Sequence record: PQ287644.1 | Reading direction: 5' to 3' (one strand) | DNA: 64,000 nt | Part shown: in pieces, positions 16,203 through 63,056 of the stretch | Layout: each line of letters begins with the position of its first letter | Position numbering within the stretch: position 1 is the first letter of the stretch | Made by a program: the position numbers and the translations under genes | The notes under the pieces: generated by a model | The model's input: the letters and a program-made list of their open reading frames with translations, nothing else | What the model was told of the DNA's origin: nothing | Database searches by the model: none

Positions 16203-16235
16203 TATTTGCAGTTATACCGTTTATTGGAATATTTT

Positions 16236-16248
16236 AAACCTACATTAT
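16236..16248 (+). promoter_or_regulatory. Putative early promoter
   Basis: ttttaaacctacattat, upstream of the operon containing the nvRNAP subunit. Confidence 0.6.
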
Positions 16249-28578: not shown

Positions 28579-28654
28579 TCCGTGATAGCTCAGTAGGTAG
28601 AGCAACTGTTTCGTAAACAGTAGGTCCCGGGTTCGAACCCTGGTCACGGAACCA
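28579..28654 (+). tRNA. tRNA-Thr(CGU)
   Basis: 76-nt cloverleaf: acceptor TCCGTGA/TCACGGA, D stem GCTC/GAGC, anticodon stem ACTGT/ACAGT with loop TTCGTAA, TTCGAAC T-loop, encoded CCA. Confidence 0.97.
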
Positions 28655-29222: not shown

Positions 29223-29244
29223 TTATTACGGTATAGCGTATTTT

Positions 29245-29257
29245 AAACCTAGATTAT
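29245..29257 (+). promoter_or_regulatory. Putative early promoter
   Basis: ttttaaacctagattat, 30 nt before an ATG. Confidence 0.55.
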
Positions 29258-55934: not shown

Positions 55935-58403
55935 ATGTTTATATTAACTAAATTGATCCTAGAGAATTACATTCCTCTGTTAAGCAGCGGAATCAAACGG
56001 GTAGAATTGGATCTGAATCATTTGGTTAACCTGTTGATCGCTCAGAACGGTGTCGGGAAAACCAGTATCCTTCGAGAAGCCAATCCCCTGGCTCCTGAGA
56101 ATGCCAACTACCGCGGTATTGGACGTAAGTACGTGGAGATTAAACGGGGATTGGACCATTTCGTTTTGGATTCTAAAACAGACTTAGGCAATGGTCACAG
56201 TTTCAAGTTTAACGGGAAAGAGTTAAACAAGAATGGAACCTTTACGGAACAGAAGGACTTGGTATGGATCCATTTCCGGTTAGACAGTACTATCAGCCGT
56301 ATTCTGTCCGGACTTAAACCCAACAGTCTGTTTTCAGCGATGCCAGTGGCTCAACGTAAAGACTTCTTTATGTTCATCTACCCGAATGACACGAGTTACG
56401 CCTTAGGGGTCTTTAACAAGCTTAAGACGGAACGTCGTGAACTGGCGGCTGCAATTAAGAACCAAGTCATGCGGTATACAGAAGAGAGTGCTAAACTCAA
56501 GCAGATCACTGAATGTGGTCCGGAAGAGCTGGAACGTCGAGTTAAGACGATTGAGACTGAACTGAGGGAGTCCCTGTTGGTACGAGGGGGGTTGGAGCAG
56601 GTGAAAGTAGACCCTGAGCTCCAAAGTAAGATTGATACCTTCAAACGCTTGGCTGAGCAGATGACATTGAACCGAGTCAGTGGGTTCTTTGAGACCGAGG
56701 CTGAACTCAGACAGGGAATCGAAACGGTTCAAGCTATCTTGAGTGTTCACGAAGGCCAAGCCACTGCCATTCAAATGGTCATCAGTGAGCATGTAGGGGT
56801 TTTGGAAGGAATGGAAGAGATCAAAGAAGATCCCTTTGTCTTCCATCATCAAGCGGAACAACTCAAGGTAGAACTCACCGCTCTCCGGGAAGAATACAAA
56901 CAGCATGGGGTGCTATTGGGTAATTACCCTTTGTTCAACGATGATGCCTATGACTTTACCGGTTTGGAATTGGTGTACGAGGCCTTGGTGGCTCAATTGC
57001 GTCGGGTGGTGAATGCCAGTACGCCTGAGTTAACCGGAGGGCGGTATAAAGAGTATACCGTCAAACTGGAGCAAACCCGTAATCAACTGAGGGCCTCTAA
57101 GAATGAACTGGACACTCTCACCCACCAGTTGAAACATTATGATGCCATGGAACTGGTGACTTGCCCGGAATGTTCCCATGAATTCAAGGTCGGGATTACC
57201 GCGAATGAACTGCGTGCAGCACGGGTTAAATCGGAAGCCCTTAAGTTGAGTGTGACTAAACTGGAGCAGGATGTTGAAACCCTGGAAAGATTAGTCGAAC
57301 AAGACAGTGAGTGGTACCACAGCATGTTGGCCTTGCATCAGTTCTGCCGGATGAATGGTGATGTTAAATGCCTACCTGAACTGATTAAAGCATACGACAT
57401 GGGTAAGTCGGACACTAATATCCTTTTAAACGCCCTCAGGGCCTTCATGGGGCGTTTTAACTGTAAGAGACGTATCGACGCCCTACTAGAAGAAGAAAAG
57501 CTCTTAAACACGCGTATAGGGCTGTTACAGAAGGATTCGGTATTAGACATCGCCACCTACTTAAAGAGTCTGGAACACGACCTGGAAGTGGAGAACAGCC
57601 GCATTGGTTTCTACCGTCGGCGTATTGAACAGCTTATAAGGAACCTAAAGACCATCCACACCTACACCCGAGACCTGGAAACCCTCCGCTGTCTTAAAGA
57701 CGAGATCTTCAAAGGGTTGGAACAGCAAGGGTTGGTGGAACTGCGTAAACGGGTTGATGAACGGATTCATTTGCTAACGGATGAGAAGGATGAATACCTC
57801 GCCTCCATTATCAAAAGCCGTTCGTTGAGTGCAGTTGTCACGTCTATTTCGGAAGACATTGATCGTTTAAAACGCCGTCTGAAGATTGTGGATGGGTTAA
57901 TGAACGGCCTGTGTCCGAATAAGGGGTTGATCGGTAAGCTGATGACGGATTTCATCAAGACCTATTGTGCCAATATGAATGCGGTGATTCAATCAGTGTG
58001 GAACACCACCCTGTTTGTTAAACCCTGCCATAAGGACAATGGGGATCTGAACTGGAAGTTCCCGGTGGTCACCGGTGATGATGAACCCACGCCAGATGTC
58101 AGTGATTGCAGTTTGGGTGAAGCGGGTATCATTGACTTTGCGTTCCGGTATGTGGCCATTCGTTACCACGGTAACTTCCCTCTGATGCTGGATGAGGTGG
58201 GTACCACCTTCGATGAAATCAAACGCGGTCGTTTCTTCAATTTCATTCACGAGTTAACCACCCAGAAGGACGCTAAACAACTCTTCATGATTAGCCATTA
58301 CATTACTCAATACGGAATGTTCACCAACCCGAATGTAATTGCGATGTGTTATGAAGGGTTGAGTTTACCGGGTGAAGTCAATCAACACAGTGTTATCAAT
58401 TAA
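55935..58403 (+). CDS. sbcC: SbcC/Rad50-like SMC ATPase
   Basis: Walker A QNGVGKTS, long coiled coils, CPEC zinc hook, degenerate signature CSLGE, Walker B LMLDE, H-loop ISH. Confidence 0.88.
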   Translation: MFILTKLILENYIPLLSSGIKRVELDLNHLVNLLIAQNGVGKTSILREANPLAPENANYRGIGRKYVEIKRGLDHFVLDSKTDLGNGHSFKFNGKELNKNGTFTEQKDLVWIHFRLDSTISRILSGLKPNSLFSAMPVAQRKDFFMFIYPNDTSYALGVFNKLKTERRELAAAIKNQVMRYTEESAKLKQITECGPEELERRVKTIETELRESLLVRGGLEQVKVDPELQSKIDTFKRLAEQMTLNRVSGFFETEAELRQGIETVQAILSVHEGQATAIQMVISEHVGVLEGMEEIKEDPFVFHHQAEQLKVELTALREEYKQHGVLLGNYPLFNDDAYDFTGLELVYEALVAQLRRVVNASTPELTGGRYKEYTVKLEQTRNQLRASKNELDTLTHQLKHYDAMELVTCPECSHEFKVGITANELRAARVKSEALKLSVTKLEQDVETLERLVEQDSEWYHSMLALHQFCRMNGDVKCLPELIKAYDMGKSDTNILLNALRAFMGRFNCKRRIDALLEEEKLLNTRIGLLQKDSVLDIATYLKSLEHDLEVENSRIGFYRRRIEQLIRNLKTIHTYTRDLETLRCLKDEIFKGLEQQGLVELRKRVDERIHLLTDEKDEYLASIIKSRSLSAVVTSISEDIDRLKRRLKIVDGLMNGLCPNKGLIGKLMTDFIKTYCANMNAVIQSVWNTTLFVKPCHKDNGDLNWKFPVVTGDDEPTPDVSDCSLGEAGIIDFAFRYVAIRYHGNFPLMLDEVGTTFDEIKRGRFFNFIHELTTQKDAKQLFMISHYITQYGMFTNPNVIAMCYEGLSLPGEVNQHSVIN

Positions 58404-58407
58404 TTTT

Positions 58408-58420
58408 AAACCTACATTAT
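58408..58420 (+). promoter_or_regulatory. Putative early promoter
   Basis: ttttaaacctacattat, identical core to 16236. Confidence 0.6.
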
Positions 58421-58442
58421 TCATTTGCAAGGAATACTTCTG

Positions 58443-58736
58443 ATGAACGTTCAACTCCCACGATCGGTTACTCTGGACGCCTATATTCAGCCGGACGGTA
58501 CACTTATGCTGGGGCCGGGTCAGGCTAAAGTGACCATTAATTACCATTCGGATCCTCAAGAATCCATTAATGCGTGCATTGTCTTTGGAGGGGCGATGCA
58601 AGCGATTGTGACCTTTGATGAAACCGGTCAGACCCCTGTGAGTTATACGCTGTTGAATCCAGGGGGGGATTACACCGTTGAGCAGTCGGTTCTTAACATC
58701 TTGTCCTATTTCGGAGTCAGTGCTCCGATGAACTAG
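58443..58736 (+). CDS. Small hypothetical protein
   Basis: 97 aa; RBS aagga; beta-rich. Confidence 0.55.
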   Translation: MNVQLPRSVTLDAYIQPDGTLMLGPGQAKVTINYHSDPQESINACIVFGGAMQAIVTFDETGQTPVSYTLLNPGGDYTVEQSVLNILSYFGVSAPMN

Positions 58737-58748
58737 GAGTCATGAGTC

Positions 58749-59189
58749 ATGAACAAAGCTGAAGTGATAGAACGGTACCGCGAACTGGTCGAAGACCTCG
58801 CCCTCCCGCCGCATCAGGTGATCCTGTCGGCGGGTGCCGCCTTGGTGGTAATGGGCATCCGAGAGGAAACAAGCGACCTCGATGTGGATGTCCCTACCAG
58901 TGTGTTCAACTGGGCGAGTAAAAAGTTCGGGGTTATCGAGAACGAAACCGTGAATAAACGGGTTCAATACACTCCCCTGGTCGATCTCCATGAATACGAC
59001 GAGAACACGGGAGTGGTGTGTATTGAGGGGGTGTGGTTGTACAGCCCTACGGAGTTACTGAAACAGAAACACTGGCTCACGAAACTGGCTGATCGAACGG
59101 ACGTTAAGACCCAACAGGATCACCGTGATATCCGCCAACTGGAAACGCTCACTCAGTCTCAACCATTCACTGCACGCGCATTGTTGTAA
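58749..59189 (+). CDS. Minimal nucleotidyltransferase (Pol-beta superfamily, AbiEii/MenT-like)
   Basis: ILSAGAALVVMGIREETSDLDVDV (G-rich loop, R-x-T-x-DxD) and C-terminal K...R...KTQQDHRDI. Confidence 0.7.
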   Translation: MNKAEVIERYRELVEDLALPPHQVILSAGAALVVMGIREETSDLDVDVPTSVFNWASKKFGVIENETVNKRVQYTPLVDLHEYDENTGVVCIEGVWLYSPTELLKQKHWLTKLADRTDVKTQQDHRDIRQLETLTQSQPFTARALL

Positions 59190-59203
59190 GGTTAGGTTAC
59201 GGT

Positions 59204-59698
59204 ATGTTTTACAGTCAATTGGAAGTGGTAGAAGCCGTTCAACGGTTCTCTGAGGCTCATAACACCCCTTTGGATAAGATCGCTATTGGCGGGGGTGGAG
59301 CTATCATGCTCATGGGGGGTCGTGAAACCACCTATGATTTGAACATTTGGGTGGAGAGTCCGTTCTTTGAACGCATTGCTGAAACCCAGAACGCTCTCCT
59401 CAGTCCTATGAGAGACAATGTGTTCCACATTGAAACGGTTATTGATTCCATGGATCAAACCGATCACGTCACCACACGTCGCCATTACTGGGTGCGTAAA
59501 CGTAACCTCTATTTCCCCACTGTTCCTGTTAAGCTGGATCAATGTCCTGAAGTCTACATCTTCGATGCGATGTCACTGTTGATTCAGAAACGTGGGAGCT
59601 ACAGTCGCCCTGAACGAGGACTCCGTCGTAAACAGGATTACAGCGACATCTGTTTCTTGAATGCGTTGTTAAAGGAAGAACACAAAGTCAGGGCTTAA
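59204..59698 (+). CDS. Second nucleotidyltransferase paralog with DxN motif
   Basis: IAIGGGGAIMLMGGRETTYDLNIWV and QK...R...RRKQDYSDI. Confidence 0.65.
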   Translation: MFYSQLEVVEAVQRFSEAHNTPLDKIAIGGGGAIMLMGGRETTYDLNIWVESPFFERIAETQNALLSPMRDNVFHIETVIDSMDQTDHVTTRRHYWVRKRNLYFPTVPVKLDQCPEVYIFDAMSLLIQKRGSYSRPERGLRRKQDYSDICFLNALLKEEHKVRA

Positions 59699-59708
59699 CC
59701 TTAGGACA

Positions 59709-59734
59709 GTACCAGGGGATCACTCCCCTGGTAC
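59709..59734. terminator. Intergenic hairpin
   Basis: gtaccagggga-tcac-tcccctggtac. Confidence 0.65.
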
Positions 59735-59766
59735 GTCTTCCTCCTTATACGGTTTAGGAGATTACA

Positions 59767-61752
59767 ATGGGTAAACACTCACCTGTTGAACGGATTAAAT
59801 ACCTCCATGAACAACTGACGTATCACGCTCATCTCTATTTCGTCGAGAACCGGAACGAGATCTCTGATGAAGCGTATGACACGTTGGAGCAAGAACTCAA
59901 TGAGTTGTACGACCGATACCCTGAAATAGCGGCTAAGTTCGATTTCTATAATCGTCCCGTTCCTATTCATGAACCCTCCGGGGAAACCATTCAACCCGTA
60001 CGGTTCGAGGAACCTATGCTCAGCTTGAAGAAAGCCTTGAGTGTGGAGGAAGCGGACACGTTCCTGTTAAAGTTCCCGGATGGTACAAACTTCTTTTACG
60101 AAGAGAAACTGGATGGGTTGGCCCTGGAGCTGGTGTATGAACAGGGACAACTGGTCAGTATGAGTACCCGGGGATCTGGATTAGTCGGGGAAGATGTGAC
60201 GCATTCCATAGTTCTCTTCGATGAAGTCACCCTTCCTCGTACCTTAAGGACGCTTCCTGACCGTCATAAACCCCAGGGGGATCGATTGGTTATTCGGGGT
60301 GAAGGGTATATCAGTCTGGAACGCTTTAATTCTCTTAATGAAACAGGGGGTAAACGGTCCAATCCCCGTAATGCCGTGAGTGGGTGGGTGCGGTCCCTCC
60401 CTCAGAACCAACGGGAGGATATCCGAGGAACGCTGTACTTCGCGGCGTATTACGCCAGTGATCGATTGGGGACGAAAGCCTATTCTGAATTGAGACAGGT
60501 TCTCTTAGGCTTAGGGTTTGGTGTTCCTGAATCCAGGGATTGGATTGCGGTCTCAGAGAACCGGAGGGGGAACATTCGTCCGGTGGATGGGATTGTGATT
60601 AAAGTCGACAAGTTCAAGGAACAAGACGCCAGTGGAAATGGGAGTAAATTCCCTCACTGGGCTATTGCTTACAAGTTCCCTGCGGAAGAAGCGTTAACCC
60701 AGGTTGAAGGCTGTATCTGGAAAACCTCTCGGTTTGGTCGGGTAGTTCCGGTGGTCCAGTATACCCCTGTAACGATCCAAGGGGTTATCTGTCAGTGTGC
60801 GTCGTTGGATAACTACGGTTCGTTTATGGACTTAGGGTTATCAATCGGGGATCGGATTGTTATTACCCGGAACAACGATGTGATCCCTCGGTTGAACCGG
60901 GTGGAGGAGTGTGGGGAAGGAGACCTCCTAGAAGCGCCTACGAACTGCCCTAGCTGCGATTCTCTCCTATGCGATTCTCTCCTAGAGGTAGTGGTAGGTA
61001 GGGACAGTTCCGAACTCGTCTGTAATAACGTCGCAGAGTGCCCTGCGCAGATTGTTATGCGGTGCGTAACGACGTTTGATAAGTTTGGACTGGATGTAGA
61101 CGGTTTAGGGCCCGTTAAGGTCAGTGAATTGGTTGAGAAAGGATGGGTTAAACAACCGGCTGATATACTTGCCCTTCCGGAAGACATTAAGGATCAATGT
61201 CTTACCCCGACGACTCGAAGAGGTTTGGAGCGTGTTCTTCAGGAACCCGTTCCTTTACACCGCTTCTTAAAGGCGTTGGGTATCCCGGATATTGGGATCA
61301 CCTTGGCTAAACGCCTGGCAAACGCCATCCCTGAAGGGAAGATCGAAGAATCCCTTACCAATCCTAAGTTCCTACAAAGTGTACGAGGGGTTTCAGTGGG
61401 GATTGCCTACAGGGTCGTGAGGGCATTTGACTCTTCGGTCTTTAAGGACAACTTCCACGCCCTAAAAGGTTTGTTAACTCTCCAGTACACCGGAACGCAG
61501 GACGACTACATTAAAGTCTGTATTACCGGCAACATTGGACCTTCCCGAGGAGAACTCTGTAACCTGTTCGCTAAGGAAGGGATTGAACTCAGTGATCGGC
61601 TTACCCAGGACTGTGCCTTTGTCATTGTGGGTGACCGCCCTGGTAAATCGAAACTGTTAATTGCAACCGAATCGGGTATACCTATGCTAATTGCAAAGGA
61701 TTATTCGAGCATTGACTCCCTCATTCAGTTCATTAAAGGACACCGAGAATGA
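59767..61752 (+). CDS. ligA: NAD-dependent DNA ligase
   Basis: ISDEAYD, MLSLKK, EEKLDG (KxDG), TRG.G..GEDVT, RGE, NPRNA, DGIVIK, WAIAYKF, OB fold, Zn finger, HhH motifs and C-terminal BRCT. Confidence 0.95.
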   Translation: MGKHSPVERIKYLHEQLTYHAHLYFVENRNEISDEAYDTLEQELNELYDRYPEIAAKFDFYNRPVPIHEPSGETIQPVRFEEPMLSLKKALSVEEADTFLLKFPDGTNFFYEEKLDGLALELVYEQGQLVSMSTRGSGLVGEDVTHSIVLFDEVTLPRTLRTLPDRHKPQGDRLVIRGEGYISLERFNSLNETGGKRSNPRNAVSGWVRSLPQNQREDIRGTLYFAAYYASDRLGTKAYSELRQVLLGLGFGVPESRDWIAVSENRRGNIRPVDGIVIKVDKFKEQDASGNGSKFPHWAIAYKFPAEEALTQVEGCIWKTSRFGRVVPVVQYTPVTIQGVICQCASLDNYGSFMDLGLSIGDRIVITRNNDVIPRLNRVEECGEGDLLEAPTNCPSCDSLLCDSLLEVVVGRDSSELVCNNVAECPAQIVMRCVTTFDKFGLDVDGLGPVKVSELVEKGWVKQPADILALPEDIKDQCLTPTTRRGLERVLQEPVPLHRFLKALGIPDIGITLAKRLANAIPEGKIEESLTNPKFLQSVRGVSVGIAYRVVRAFDSSVFKDNFHALKGLLTLQYTGTQDDYIKVCITGNIGPSRGELCNLFAKEGIELSDRLTQDCAFVIVGDRPGKSKLLIATESGIPMLIAKDYSSIDSLIQFIKGHRE

Positions 61753-63056
61753 CTGTTAAAACCGACACCAACGACCAACAACACACTGCCACTGACCCGG
61801 TAGTAGCAATGAAACTCAAGAAGGCCGAGAAGGCTCTGAAACACTCCAAGGAACTGGGTAAGAAGATGAAACACGACAAGGAACAGTTGGATAAGAAATC
61901 CATTACCCAACCCACTGAGAATAAAGAACACCGTTCCGCTCCTGAACCTTCTAAGCCCAAGGTGGTGGTTGACGGTAAGGAACTGGTGGCTCTCGATACC
62001 AAGCCGTACGGCGAATGGATCCGTTCCAAAGAAGGACGTGAAATTCTTGGGAATAAATACTGGTCAGTAGGTGTAACCGCGGAAATCGACCTCTTCTCTC
62101 ATTTCAAGACGACTCTTTACGGTGTTGAACTTGATCTCTTGGTCGACTCCTATTCTGAAGTTACGCTGGAAACCCCTGCTGACGTTCCTTTCCTTAACGT
62201 CAGTAAGCGTAAGGGGAGTGCTGTGGTAGTCAACTCGGTGGTTAATCGTTGTGAGTTTGAAGGGGAGAATTGTCTTCTGAATGTCGAGGTTAACGACTGC
62301 GCAGTTAACAACAGCAGCGTCGCTCGTACACGATCGATGGTGTTGCGACCAATCGACGAACTGATCGACTTCCCAAAAAGAGCGGATGTATTTAGACGAG
62401 GGGTTGATCAACGCGCCCGGTACAACGACTGCCGTTTCATCGAATCCGAGATTAAAGATTCTCCCATCAATGGCAAGGGCTTAGTGAAAGAGTCGTATGT
62501 GGATCGTACCCACATTACCGCTGGGAAGTTTGCCATCGTTAAATCGCATCTTACCACCACCACCCTCACCGCATCCATGCTGTCTCTCTCGAAAGCTTAC
62601 CTTCATGGTTGTTACTTGAGCGTTTCTGAAACGCTGATCCTTCGCAACTTCACCCTCCGGAATAAGACGCTTTACATGAGGTCACTCTACGCGCCTAATA
62701 AACTGGGTCTTACGGAGATCGAACTTCCGTTCCATCCTCAAAATCTTATTCTGCACCGCACCTCAAAAACACAGTATGTAATCTCCATCCGCTCGGGTGG
62801 TTCGTCCGGCCTTGAACTGGGGAGCGACGTAACTTGGGAAGAACTCAGTGAAAAACTGGGTGAACTCTTGATAAAAACCCCGATGGTCAATAACGAGATC
62901 TCTGAAGACGGACTCCTCTTCAAAAGCATCTTGAATTATGTCCTGAAGTCGGTGATTTCTCGGATGAAGATCATCAAGTTGATGGACGATGTGATGGCTG
63001 TTAACCGTAGTATCACATCAGATTTCGAGGATCCTGAGTCCGTCCCGTATTGTTAG
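61749..63056 (+). CDS. Hypothetical protein with beta-solenoid-like repeats
   Basis: Lys-rich N-tail and ~5-residue periodic segments (e.g. FIESE IKDSP). Confidence 0.55.
   Translation: MTVKTDTNDQQHTATDPVVAMKLKKAEKALKHSKELGKKMKHDKEQLDKKSITQPTENKEHRSAPEPSKPKVVVDGKELVALDTKPYGEWIRSKEGREILGNKYWSVGVTAEIDLFSHFKTTLYGVELDLLVDSYSEVTLETPADVPFLNVSKRKGSAVVVNSVVNRCEFEGENCLLNVEVNDCAVNNSSVARTRSMVLRPIDELIDFPKRADVFRRGVDQRARYNDCRFIESEIKDSPINGKGLVKESYVDRTHITAGKFAIVKSHLTTTTLTASMLSLSKAYLHGCYLSVSETLILRNFTLRNKTLYMRSLYAPNKLGLTEIELPFHPQNLILHRTSKTQYVISIRSGGSSGLELGSDVTWEELSEKLGELLIKTPMVNNEISEDGLLFKSILNYVLKSVISRMKIIKLMDDVMAVNRSITSDFEDPESVPYC

What the first reader, a model, noticed from the sequence alone, without database searches (positions are those of the whole stretch)
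58408..59734. Early operon with an active-like (DxD) and a degenerate (DxN) nucleotidyltransferase
Seen: a self-contained unit (early motif at 58408, hairpin at 59709) with a 97-aa ORF and two paralogous minimal NTases. Both keep the G-rich loop, R-x-T-x-D and the C-terminal K..R..(K/Q)D..DI helix; the first has DLD, the second DLN. Known: this motif set typifies AbiEii/MenT-type enzymes, some of which add nucleotides to tRNA 3' ends. Inference: an enzyme plus pseudo-enzyme regulator, or a heterodimer, that repairs or blocks tRNA ends, nucleotidylates host proteins, or counters nucleotide-signal defence. It lies next to LigA and RNase H.
Basis: partly seen in the sequence, partly recalled or inferred. 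Interest (0 to 1): 0.72.

Follow-up and report, generated by a model that had tools for sequence, protein, structure and literature searches.

The report
Phage enzyme paired with dead copy
A giant Pseudomonas phage (EL type) carries a small three-gene unit encoding an apparently active nucleotide-transferring enzyme, a permanently inactivated copy of it and a tiny acidic protein; the trio is kept together in some 25 related giant phages, belongs to no characterised family, and its target is still unknown.

Summary
The window is an Elvirus genome: 100% identical to phage HHBS8_1 and 98% to EL over this region. The region is EL ORF119–121, all annotated as hypothetical.

**What is established**
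- ORF120 (146 aa) and ORF121 (164 aa) are true paralogues (hhalign 98%, E 2e-13).
- Both fold confidently (pLDDT 86 and 92) as minimal Pol-β-type nucleotidyltransferases (NTases).
- ORF120 keeps the whole family signature: G..G-x-R-x2-T-x-D-L-D-x-D, D-L-H, QK, R, K-x3-D-x2-D-I.
- In the ORF121 clade the second acid is always N or S, and the acidic position two residues on is an invariant Trp. The Lys and the C-terminal helix remain, and new invariant residues have appeared.
- The trio lies between a conserved promoter-like motif and a conserved hairpin. It sits between the SbcC-like gene and LigA in about 25 EL-like genomes and is under purifying selection.

**What is not established**
- Membership of AbiEii/MenT fails at sequence level. 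The only recurring Pfam link is weak, to DUF6036. The similarity to MenT1 and JHP933 is fold and motif only.
- The substrate is unknown, and "early" expression is untested.
- Two lineages have lost the D-x-D in the "active" copy as well, so catalysis may not be the conserved role.

**Verdict:** a real, uncharacterised, phage-restricted enzyme plus pseudo-enzyme module. Interest is moderate.

The parts
58403..58420 (+). Promoter-like motif ATTTTAAACCTACATTAT, directly after the stop codon of the SbcC-like gene
   Evidence: Three near-identical copies occur in the window, at 16233, 29242 and 58405. Eighteen columns are invariant across them. They coincide with the EL record's 'putative phage promoter' features. 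The core [AT]AAACCTA[CT]AT[TC]A is kept at the orthologous position in L003, L005, L006, L007, L008, L012 and L014. The temporal class is not known.
58443..58736 (+). ORF119: 97-aa very acidic protein (pI 4.05) of unknown function, first gene of the unit
   Evidence: Annotated CDS in EL and HHBS8_1. Hits PHROG 16812 at E 2e-7. pN/pS is 0-0.06 within Elvirus. Orthologues lie upstream of the pair in every EL-like locus long enough to show the gene upstream of the pair. The family comprises 37 clusters, and where contig length is informative they come from about 215-240 kb contigs.
58749..59189 (+). ORF120: 146-aa minimal Pol-β-fold nucleotidyltransferase with the complete family signature (copy A, active-like)
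   Evidence: Hits PHROG 12854 at E 3.8e-47. AF2 pLDDT is 86. All 22 best PDB fold matches are nucleotidyltransferases. It keeps G29, G36, R38, T41, D43, D45, D47, D79, H81, G94, Y98, Q106, K107, R116, K120, D124 and D127, the conserved positions of the wider family. pN/pS is 0.07-0.30.
59204..59698 (+). ORF121: 164-aa catalytically degenerate paralogue (copy B, pseudo-enzyme) with D45-L-N47-I-W49
   Evidence: Hits PHROG 12854 at E 4.7e-47. AF2 pLDDT is 92. Fold matches are NTase-like proteins, Mimivirus poly(A) polymerase, TM1012, ANT(2'') and Pol β/λ. In the clade the second acid is N or S in every sequence examined (about 28). G29, G30, W49, F55, R98, N101, Y103, K129 and D148 are invariant in the 12-sequence alignment. 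pN/pS is 0-0.27.
59703..59739 (+). Strong stem-loop closing the unit, a terminator or RNA-stability element (inner stem 59709-59719 / 59724-59734)
   Evidence: Folds at -26.1 kcal/mol, z = -5.72, and none of 200 shuffles does as well. A hairpin with a different stem sequence sits at the same position in six relatives. There is no Rfam match. The simple terminator scan missed it because the T-run is weak.
55935..58403 (+). Upstream neighbour: SbcC/Rad50-like protein (EL ORF118), a conserved synteny anchor
   Evidence: Annotation, a weak SMC_N match, and synteny in all EL-like loci.
59767..61752 (+). Downstream neighbour: NAD-dependent DNA ligase LigA (EL ORF122)
   Evidence: Annotation and Pfam ligase domains in the relatives. 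It is absent at this position in L006, although the pair is still there.

Best explanation
The region is one transcription unit, running from a conserved promoter-like motif to a conserved hairpin, in an EL-type nucleus-forming jumbo phage.

It encodes a small acidic protein (ORF119) and two tandem paralogues of a family so far seen only in phage contexts. Members of that family are minimal Pol-β-fold nucleotidyltransferases of about 135-165 aa (PHROG 12854, with a distant link to Pfam DUF6036).

**ORF120** keeps every conserved catalytic-type residue. It is most likely a Mg2+-dependent enzyme that transfers an NMP from an NTP to an acceptor hydroxyl.

**ORF121** belongs to an old sister clade that has lost the metal-binding acids: the second acid is N or S, and the acidic position two residues on is Trp. 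It keeps the conserved lysine and the C-terminal helix, and it has gained its own invariant residues (W49, R98, N101, Y103). It is therefore a maintained pseudo-enzyme, not a decaying gene.

I infer that the two proteins, possibly together with ORF119, form a complex with a single active site. The dead copy would supply a binding or regulatory surface.

My best guess for the acceptor is the 3' end of a nucleic acid, either an RNA or a DNA/primer end. This rests on the fold neighbours of known function and on the replication/repair and ligase neighbourhood.

**Likelihoods**
- NTase plus pseudo-NTase paralogue pair: about 0.85 (shown).
- They act as a complex: about 0.6 (inferred).
- The acceptor is a nucleic-acid 3' end: about 0.35 (inferred).

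The single confidence figure given for this explanation (0.5) is for the whole layered statement.
For: **Fold.** Both AF2 models are confident. Their significant PDB neighbours are all or mostly nucleotidyltransferases: TM1012, JHP933, MenT1, ANT(2'')-Ia, Mimivirus/Megavirus/vaccinia poly(A) polymerases and Pol β/λ. BFVD neighbours are uncharacterised proteins of other nucleus-forming phages (RP12, 201phi2-1, PhiEaH1, RSF1, Noxifer, Phabio), followed by poly(A) polymerase catalytic subunits of large eukaryotic DNA viruses.

**Family.** There are 442 clusters at E<=1e-3. D43, D45, R38, G29, G36 and D124 are at least 90% conserved.

**Paralogy.**

**Degeneracy of copy B.** It is fixed in every orthologue, and the clade has its own invariant residues.

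**Selection.** All three genes are under purifying selection.

**Coupling.** Intergenic distances between copies A and B are -8 to +14 nt in nine lineages.

**Co-conservation.** The trio is found in 8 of 9 metagenomic or cultured lineages and in 16 of 17 EL-like IMG/VR genomes.

**Unit boundaries.** Both are conserved.

**Motif parallel.** ORF120 T41, D43, K107 and D124 follow the order of MenT1 T39, D41, K137 and D152 (PMC11375011) and of MenT3 S78, D80, K189 and D211 (PMC7450476).

**Context.** The neighbours are SbcC-like, LigA, RNase H and DHH genes. The single-copy homologue in Ralstonia phage RSF1 also abuts a DNA ligase. Ligase-associated Pol-β NTases that mend nucleic-acid ends are a known theme in jumbo phages (RlaP; PMC7824862).
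Against: - No activity, interaction or substrate has been tested.
- All three proteins are acidic (pI 4.05, 5.07 and 6.52), which is unusual for nucleic-acid enzymes.
- ORF120 lacks any extra RNA- or DNA-binding domain.
- The 'active' copy has lost its D-x-D in L007 by clustered point substitutions, and in L012 along with R38, T41, Q106 and R116. In L012 neither copy looks catalytic.
- The presumed third carboxylate, D79, is Asp in only 80 of 138 relatives.
- Fusions in the wider family are to GNAT acetyltransferase and NUDIX domains, and one relative sits beside Tad2-like genes. These point to small-molecule or counter-defence chemistry rather than end repair.
- Adjacency to ligase in EL and RSF1 may simply be inherited synteny.
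Confidence: 0.5

Rival explanations
1. Counter-defence or small-molecule enzyme. The pair nucleotidylates a small, probably cationic or nucleotide-derived, molecule. Candidates are an aminoglycoside-like antibiotic or an immune signal. Alternatively it makes a competitor nucleotide, in the manner of ANT(2'')-Ia or of the phage MNT-like enzymes reported to make decoy cyclic dinucleotides.
For: - ANT(2'')-Ia is a repeated fold neighbour of both proteins, and one relative hits its Pfam model weakly.
- The proteins are small and acidic like aminoglycoside-modifying enzymes (the comparison is from my own knowledge).
- Three independent fusions to GNAT acetyltransferases exist, one of them also carrying NUDIX.
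- One relative lies among two Tad2-like genes and GNATs.
- EL ORF126, 3.5 kb downstream, passes the Pfam Acb1 (anti-CBASS) threshold.
- A precedent exists for phage minimal NTases acting against TIR-STING (bioRxiv 10.1101/2022.06.09.495361).
Against: - Fold similarity to ANT(2'') is no better than to the RNA-end enzymes (TM 0.51-0.53).
- The published phage decoy-signal NTases have a different motif (GS...SDxD), and no NTP_transf_2 or MNT Pfam hit was found.
- There were no PADLOC hits.
- In EL-like phages the immediate neighbours are replication and repair genes.
Confidence: 0.25
2. Non-catalytic binder or decoy. The conserved job of the pair is binding rather than chemistry. It could sequester a nucleotide, or occupy a host factor or a host NTase-type toxin system. 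ORF120's intact site would then be ancestral baggage or a secondary function.
For: - The whole B clade is catalytically dead yet strongly conserved, with new invariant residues.
- The A copy lost its D-x-D independently in L007 and L012 while the gene stayed intact and syntenic.
- About 7-9% of the wider family lacks one of the two acids.
Against: - D43 and D45 are kept in more than 90% of the family and in about 23 of 25 EL-like A copies. That argues for selection on catalysis.
- L007 and L012 are single metagenomic contigs each.
- The rest of those genomes was not searched for another active copy.
Confidence: 0.15
3. MenT/AbiEii-like toxin module. ORF120 blocks host or competitor translation by extending tRNA 3' ends. 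ORF121 or the small upstream ORF119 acts as its antitoxin-like restraint. The trio would resemble the MenT1-MenA1-MenT1 heterotrimer, with one small protein bridging two NTase protomers.
For: - MenT1 and JHP933 are fold neighbours.
- The residue order T-x-D ... K ... D is as in MenT1 and MenT3 (PMC11375011, PMC7450476).
- The layout of a small upstream gene plus NTase resembles MenA1-MenT1, and MenA1 binds two MenT1 protomers asymmetrically (PMC10435456, PMC11375011).
Against: - No sequence-level membership in DUF1814.
- ORF120 is 40-150 aa shorter than MenT toxins.
- The proteins are acidic, whereas MenT3 and MenT4 were described with surface electrostatics suited to tRNA (PMC7450476).
- A general tRNA poison would also stop phage translation.
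- The family has so far been seen only in phage contexts; no scan of bacterial genomes succeeded.
Confidence: 0.12
4. The ORFs or their resemblance are chance, or ORF121 is a decaying pseudogene.
For: Neither protein has a Pfam, NCBIfam or PADLOC hit. One GenBank record (vB_PQ1) shows ORF119 and ORF121 split.
Against: - Purifying selection on all three genes.
- Orthologues at 30-50% identity in about 25 genomes.
- Confident folds and clade-specific invariant residues.
- The vB_PQ1 record has 488 features in 184 kb and also splits neighbouring genes, so its breaks look like assembly errors.
Confidence: 0.01

Closest known systems
DUF1814 / AbiEii / MenT nucleotidyltransferase toxins (MenT1 8AN4/8AN5; JHP933 4O8S)
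   Same: Pol-β NTase fold (Foldseek prob 1.0, TM about 0.55). The conserved residues appear in the same order: [ST]-x-D-x-D, a later Lys, then an Asp on a C-terminal helix (PMC11375011, PMC7450476). A small gene lies upstream.
   Different: No PF08843 hit for the proteins or for 136 relatives. ORF120 is 146 aa against about 190-300 aa. It is acidic. Its relatives have been seen only in phage contexts. It is paired with a dead paralogue rather than an AbiEi- or MenA-type antitoxin. Toxicity and tRNA activity are untested.
Pfam DUF6036 (PF19502), nucleotidyltransferase of unknown function
   Same: It is the only Pfam family hit repeatedly by relatives (12 of 136, best E 3.8e-7). The domain size is similar.
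   Different: ORF120 and ORF121 themselves do not hit it. DUF6036 is itself uncharacterised, and no paper in the library mentions it.
TM1012 putative nucleotidyltransferase (2EWR/2FCL)
   Same: Best PDB fold match for ORF120 and a top match for ORF121, with nearly the same length (156 aa) and TM 0.55-0.60.
   Different: Only 9-11% identity, no sequence-level link, and the function of TM1012 is unknown.
Giant-virus and poxvirus poly(A) polymerases (Mimivirus 4WSE, Megavirus 4P37, vaccinia VP55)
   Same: Repeated fold neighbours in the PDB and BFVD. From my own memory of the Mimivirus structure paper, which I did not check here, that enzyme also combines an active and an inactive NTase-like domain. 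This would parallel the active plus dead pair.
   Different: Those are proteins of 450-500 aa with extra domains. Here the two NTase modules are separate 146- and 164-aa proteins. No evidence of RNA tailing exists.
ANT(2'')-Ia aminoglycoside nucleotidyltransferase (4WQK, 5CFS)
   Same: Small (177 aa) single-domain NTase that is a fold neighbour of both proteins. GNAT fusions in the wider family recall bifunctional resistance enzymes.
   Different: TM is only 0.50-0.53. One weak Pfam hit among 136 relatives. No evidence for an antibiotic substrate.
RlaP, RNA-ligase-associated Pol-β NTases of jumbo phages
   Same: A phage Pol-β NTase encoded next to a ligase and proposed to restore lost end nucleotides before sealing (PMC7824862). 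Here the pair abuts LigA, and the RSF1 homologue abuts a ligase.
   Different: No RlaP family match appeared in any Pfam scan. The neighbouring ligase here is an NAD-dependent DNA ligase, not an RNA ligase.

Membership tests
Pol-β-like nucleotidyltransferase superfamily | Minimal α/β NTase fold | tested here: met
   AF2 models have pLDDT 86 and 92. The top 22 PDB hits for ORF120 are all NTases, and ORF121 hits NTase-like proteins, poly(A) polymerase, TM1012, ANT(2'') and Pol β/λ.
Pol-β-like nucleotidyltransferase superfamily | Gly-rich loop followed by the D-x-[DE] metal-binding pair on the next strand | tested here: met
   ORF120 has G29...G36...D43-L-D45 on predicted strand 44-48. The feature is not met by ORF121 (D45-L-N47) or by any copy-B orthologue.
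Pol-β-like nucleotidyltransferase superfamily | Third carboxylate on a neighbouring strand | tested here: inconclusive
   ORF120 has D79 on strand 78-82, next to the highly conserved H81. Position 79 is Asp in only 80 of 138 relatives and Ser in 33. Model coordinates could not be inspected.
DUF1814 / AbiEii / MenT | Match to the family's sequence model (Pfam PF08843) | tested here: not met
   No hit at E<=10 for ORF120 or ORF121, and none among 136 relatives at E<=10.
DUF1814 / AbiEii / MenT | Four motifs, including the toxin-specific C-terminal Lys (III) and Asp (IV) | tested here: inconclusive
   ORF120 T41, D43, K107 and D124 follow the order of MenT1 T39, D41, K137 and D152 and of MenT3 S78, D80, K189 and D211 (PMC11375011, PMC7450476). 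This is a pattern comparison only. No profile-profile alignment to DUF1814 was possible.
DUF1814 / AbiEii / MenT | Structural similarity to solved members | tested here: met
   MenT1 8AN4/8AN5 and JHP933 4O8S/4OK0 match at prob 0.97-1.0 and TMq 0.51-0.56. They rank no better than non-members.
DUF1814 / AbiEii / MenT | Growth-inhibiting tRNA 3'-end extension neutralised by a cognate antitoxin | not testable with these tools
   This needs toxicity assays and tRNA 3'-end sequencing.
Pfam DUF6036 (PF19502) | Match above the gathering score (23.6 bits) | tested here: not met
   No hit for ORF120 or ORF121. Only 12 of 136 relatives hit at E<=10, and 4 at E<=0.01.
PHROG 12854 (phage protein family of unknown function) | Full-length match to the PHROG profile | tested here: met
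   ORF120 scores E 3.8e-47 over profile positions 1-136 of 137, and ORF121 scores E 4.7e-47 over 1-136 of 137.
MNT of HEPN-MNT systems, and the phage MNT-like decoy-signal NTases | GS-x(n)-SDxD signature / NTP_transf_2-type model | tested here: not met
   The signature here is G[GA]A-x4-G-x-R-x2-T-x-D-L-D. No such Pfam hit was found. The motif of the phage decoy NTases is taken from bioRxiv 10.1101/2022.06.09.495361.
RlaP ligase-associated NTase | Match to the family model and adjacency to an RNA ligase | tested here: not met
   No RlaP-type Pfam hit. The neighbour is the NAD-dependent DNA ligase LigA.
Known anti-phage defence proteins (PADLOC) | Match to any defence-system model | tested here: not met
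   No hit at E<=10 for any of the three proteins.

The most novel reading that the evidence does not exclude
The trio forms a split, heteromeric nucleic-acid tailing enzyme: an active NTase, a dead NTase and a small acidic adaptor. In this reading it is a phage counterpart of the poly(A) polymerases of giant eukaryotic viruses. It would add untemplated nucleotides to phage or host RNA 3' ends, or to DNA ends handed to the neighbouring ligase, in a phage that separates transcription from translation behind a protein nucleus.
Probability: 0.1. Interest if true: 0.8.

Novelty: new variant of a known kind. Interest (0 to 1): 0.5.

Why it matters
The wider family has at least 442 sequence clusters. 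Every genomic context examined was a large phage. It has no name, no solved structure and no known function.

EL-type phages have kept an active-looking copy, a permanently inactivated copy and a small acidic partner as one tightly coupled unit through deep divergence. Over that divergence protein identity has fallen to 30-50%. That conservation makes this a clean natural system for asking what a viral pseudo-enzyme partner does.

If the substrate is a nucleic-acid end, this would add a new end-modifying activity to the replication and repair toolkit of nucleus-forming phages. If it is a signal molecule or a host protein, it would be a new counter-defence enzyme.

Either way the genes are short and separable, and they can be assayed with standard methods.

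Tried and rejected
- **Sequence searches of the PDB.** Three profiles (A1, A2, A3) gave only chance-level hits.
- **Family libraries.** Pfam, NCBIfam and PADLOC scans of the three proteins gave nothing usable.
- **Pfam on relatives.** Across 136 relatives, at strict and at lax thresholds, only DUF6036 recurred.
- **Locus scans.** The search for related loci with the broad alignment A3 failed on both the genome and viral collections, and with A1 it failed on genome contigs, because no stretch was conserved enough. Absence from cellular genomes was therefore not tested directly. It is inferred only from the phage character of every context seen.
- **Homologues in phiKZ-type phages.** tblastn of ORF121, and of the RP12 homologue, against cultured phages found no phiKZ or 201phi2-1 homologue by sequence. 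Only Foldseek links those phages.
- **Literature.** Nothing on DUF6036, nothing on these EL genes, and no EL transcriptome. 'Early' therefore could not be checked.
- **RNA families.** The Rfam scan of the region was empty.
- **Tandem fusions.** I tested whether the long relatives (220-430 aa) are fused A+B tandems. Each has a single NTase domain.
- **The small genes after the pair in L005 and L006.** I tested whether these 96-aa genes are displaced ORF119 copies. They are unrelated; the real ORF119 orthologues lie upstream.
- **Split genes in vB_PQ1.** I rejected these as evidence that the genes are dispensable, because that record looks badly assembled.
Full report
**Identity of the window and of the region**

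The 1361 bases around the finding are 100% identical to Pseudomonas phages HHBS8_1 and HHBS47_1 and 98.2% identical to phage EL. EL belongs to the genus Elvirus in the Chimalliviridae, the nucleus-forming jumbo phages.

They are annotated 'hypothetical protein' in every record.
- Upstream lies the SbcC/Rad50-like ORF118.
- Downstream lie the NAD-dependent ligase LigA, an unknown 435-aa protein, RNase H and a DHH phosphoesterase.

Within Elvirus all three evolve under purifying selection, with pN/pS between 0 and 0.30 in every pairwise comparison of five strains. They are therefore real genes, the degenerate one included.

The two larger proteins are paralogues:
- BLASTP gives E 3e-7 over the N-terminal 52 residues.
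- Both match PHROG 12854 end to end at about 4e-47.
- Profiles built from orthologues of one gene only find the other gene at 1e-9 to 1e-12, and hhalign aligns 135 columns at 98% probability, E 1.8e-13.

The motifs are as described, except that the spacing is R-x-x-T-x-D rather than R-x-T-x-D.
- ORF120 has G29, G36, R38, T41, D43-L-D45-V-D47, Q106-K107, R116, K120, D124 and D127-I.
- ORF121 has R40, T43, D45-L-N47-I-W49, Q128-K129 and the same C-terminal K-Q-D-x2-D-I helix.

**Unit boundaries**

The motif after the ORF118 stop has the core TTTAAACCTACATTA at 58405-58419. It has two more near-exact copies in the window, at 16233 and 29242, with 18 invariant columns. These are exactly the three 'putative phage promoter' features of the EL record.

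The core is kept at the orthologous position in seven relatives whose proteins are only 30-50% identical, while the flanks have diverged. That is a phylogenetic footprint.

The copy at 16233 precedes an unknown gene and a polymerase gene, just after the major head gene.

The hairpin at 59703-59739 folds at -26.1 kcal/mol, z = -5.7. A strong hairpin with a different stem sequence follows the second paralogue in all six relatives examined. No Rfam family matches the region.

**Fold and family**

AlphaFold2 models are confident: ORF120 has pLDDT 86 and ORF121 has pLDDT 92.

Foldseek against the PDB returns only nucleotidyltransferases among the 22 best hits for ORF120:
- TM1012
- JHP933
- MenT1
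- ANT(2'')-Ia
- the poly(A) polymerases of Mimivirus, Megavirus and vaccinia

ORF121 matches an NTase-like fungal protein, Mimivirus poly(A) polymerase, TM1012, ANT(2'')-Ia and Pol β/λ.

Against predicted viral structures, the best matches are uncharacterised proteins of other nucleus-forming phages (RP12, EL gp121 itself, 201phi2-1, PhiEaH1, RSF1, Noxifer, Phabio). Poly(A) polymerase catalytic subunits of large eukaryotic DNA viruses come next.

A profile search of 1.84 billion representative proteins finds 442 clusters at E<=1e-3 and 199 at E<=1e-10. Nearly all are single-domain proteins of 130-170 aa. Their conserved positions are exactly those kept by ORF120: G29, A31, G36, R38, T41, D43, L44, D45, H81, G94, K107, L110, D124 and L131 at 80% or more, with D47, Y98, Q106, R116, K120 and D127 also common.

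Every genomic context I could read is a large phage:
- a contig with a phiKZ-type internal head protein;
- a contig with two Tad2-like genes, GNATs, thioredoxin and ribonucleotide reductase;
- unannotated contigs, the longest carrying the protein reaching about 220 kb.

Cultured homologues are all in jumbo phages of Ralstonia, Pseudomonas and Burkholderia.

**Relation to named families**

At sequence level the family is an orphan.
- Pfam, NCBIfam and PADLOC find nothing for the two proteins.
- PDB profile searches give noise.
- Among 136 relatives the only recurring Pfam family is DUF6036, itself of unknown function: 4 hits at E<=0.01, 12 at E<=10, best 3.8e-7.
- AbiEii (PF08843) is never hit.

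- Fold resemblance: TM about 0.55, no better than to TM1012, ANT(2'') or the viral poly(A) polymerases.
- The order of conserved residues. That order does parallel the conserved MenT1 residues T39, D41, K137 and D152 and the MenT3 residues S78, D80, K189 and D211 (PMC11375011, PMC7450476).

I treat this as 'works perhaps like', not 'is a member of'.

**The degenerate copy is an old, maintained clade**

The ORF121 type (copy B) is represented by at least seven 50%-identity clusters.

It occurs immediately downstream of an ORF120-type gene (copy A) in all nine lineages first examined: the window, L003, L005-L008 and L012-L014. The gaps between the two genes are -8 to +14 nt. It also occurs in 16 of 17 EL-like genomes from IMG/VR.

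In every copy B:
- the second acidic position is N or S;
- the residue two positions further on is Trp;
- the D/S-L-H strand motif is gone;
- the Lys of the Q-K motif and the C-terminal D-I helix remain;
- new invariant residues appear (W49, F55, R98, N101, Y103).

Copy B also carries a longer β-hairpin, at residues 73-99 of the model.

Other cultured jumbo phages (RP12, FLC1-1B, RSF1) have a single copy, so the duplication is specific to the EL-like lineage. One sub-lineage has a still more degenerate third type. It is an extra gene in L025 and replaces copy B in L027.

**The small first gene**

ORF119 is 97 aa with pI 4.05. It has orthologues upstream of the pair in every EL-like locus long enough to show the gene upstream of the pair, including L005 and L006, where I first mistook other small genes for it. 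A profile search finds 37 clusters. Where contig length is informative, they come from genomes of about 215-240 kb. The unit is therefore a conserved trio.

**A complication**

The 'active' copy is not always active-looking.
- In L007 nine substitutions are packed into the 20-residue catalytic loop (G29E, D43N, D45V and others). These are point changes, not a frameshift. The rest of the protein is largely conserved with L008, at 83% identity overall.
- In L012 the A copy has lost R38, T41, D43, D45, D47, Q106 and R116, so neither copy there has a D-x-D.

Each of these is a single metagenomic contig, and I could not search the rest of those genomes. Even so, catalysis may not be the only conserved role, or it may be dispensable on some hosts.

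**Mechanism**

What is shown:
- an NTase-fold enzyme candidate with a complete catalytic-type signature;
- a fixed dead paralogue;
- a small acidic partner;
- tight coupling, co-conservation and purifying selection.

What is inferred: the proteins form a complex with a single active site in which the dead copy supplies a binding or regulatory surface. The tools could not model complexes.

The acceptor is unknown. I favour a nucleic-acid 3' end at about 0.35, for three reasons.
- Half of the functionally characterised fold neighbours act on RNA 3' ends (MenT1 and the viral poly(A) polymerases), and others act on DNA 3' ends.
- The unit sits in a replication and repair block beside LigA, and the RSF1 homologue also abuts a ligase.
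- Ligase-associated Pol-β NTases that mend ends are an established theme in jumbo phages (PMC7824862).

Four points count against this.
- The proteins are acidic.
- They lack nucleic-acid-binding add-ons.
- Relatives are fused to GNAT and NUDIX domains.
- One relative lies among Tad2-like genes, and EL ORF126 nearby is Acb1-like.

These points favour a small-molecule, signal or protein target in counter-defence (about 0.25). A purely non-catalytic role (about 0.15) and a MenT-like toxin module (about 0.12) remain open.

**Novelty and score**

The fold and the enzyme plus pseudo-enzyme theme are known kinds. This family, its apparent restriction to large phages and the conserved trio are uncharacterised: the PHROG is listed as 'unknown function', the genes are 'hypothetical protein' in all records, and I found no literature.

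I class it as a new variant of a known kind. A specialist would find it a good, tractable lead rather than a surprise, so I score interest at 0.5.

Noticed in passing
L002:12741-13166 (EL ORF126; about 3.5 kb past the finding, just outside the window's end): A 141-aa protein annotated 'RNA ligase' or 'hypothetical' passes the Pfam gathering score for Acb1, the anti-CBASS 2H phosphodiesterase (43.5 bits against 27). An anti-signalling gene therefore probably sits in the same gene block.
   Followed up: partly
L007:4001-4450 and L012:3564-3992: The normally active-looking paralogue has lost its D-x-D. In L007 this happened by nine clustered point substitutions in the catalytic loop. In L012 most other signature residues are lost as well, so L012 has no catalytic-looking copy in the locus.
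   Followed up: partly
L025:3836-4330 and L027:3422-3874: A third, still more degenerate paralogue type ('VV-DKTCMDVL...KLSM') exists. It is an extra gene after copy B in L025 and takes the place of copy B in L027.
   Followed up: no
window 16233-16247 and 29242-29256: Two more copies of the promoter-like motif. One lies after the major head gene, before an unknown gene and a polymerase gene. The other lies before an unknown 178-aa gene. Both are annotated as putative promoters in EL.
   Followed up: partly
window 28579-28654: A tRNA-Thr (anticodon CGT) gene, the only tRNA in the window.
   Followed up: no
P0078, P0144, P0132 (relatives from metagenomes): Members of the wider family are fused to GNAT acetyltransferase domains in three separate clusters, one of which also carries a NUDIX domain. 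Other long relatives carry unrecognised extensions of 80-200 aa.
   Followed up: partly
L016:1066-2197: A single-copy family member lies about 3 kb from two tandem Tad2-like (anti-Thoeris sponge) genes and two GNAT genes on a 66-kb phage contig.
   Followed up: no
L042 (PQ516283.1, phage vB_PQ1): ORF119 and ORF121 are split into several small CDSs. The record has 488 features in 184 kb and also shortens neighbouring genes, so this looks like assembly or sequencing error rather than gene loss.
   Followed up: partly
L006 (ENA contig k141_3423053): This EL-like relative keeps the trio but has no LigA gene at the usual position after it. The pair therefore does not strictly need the ligase as a neighbour.
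   Followed up: no
window 61749-63056: EL ORF123 (435 aa), between LigA and RNase H and overlapping the LigA stop codon, has no Pfam or PHROG match at the thresholds used. It is nevertheless syntenic in the EL-like relatives.
   Followed up: no
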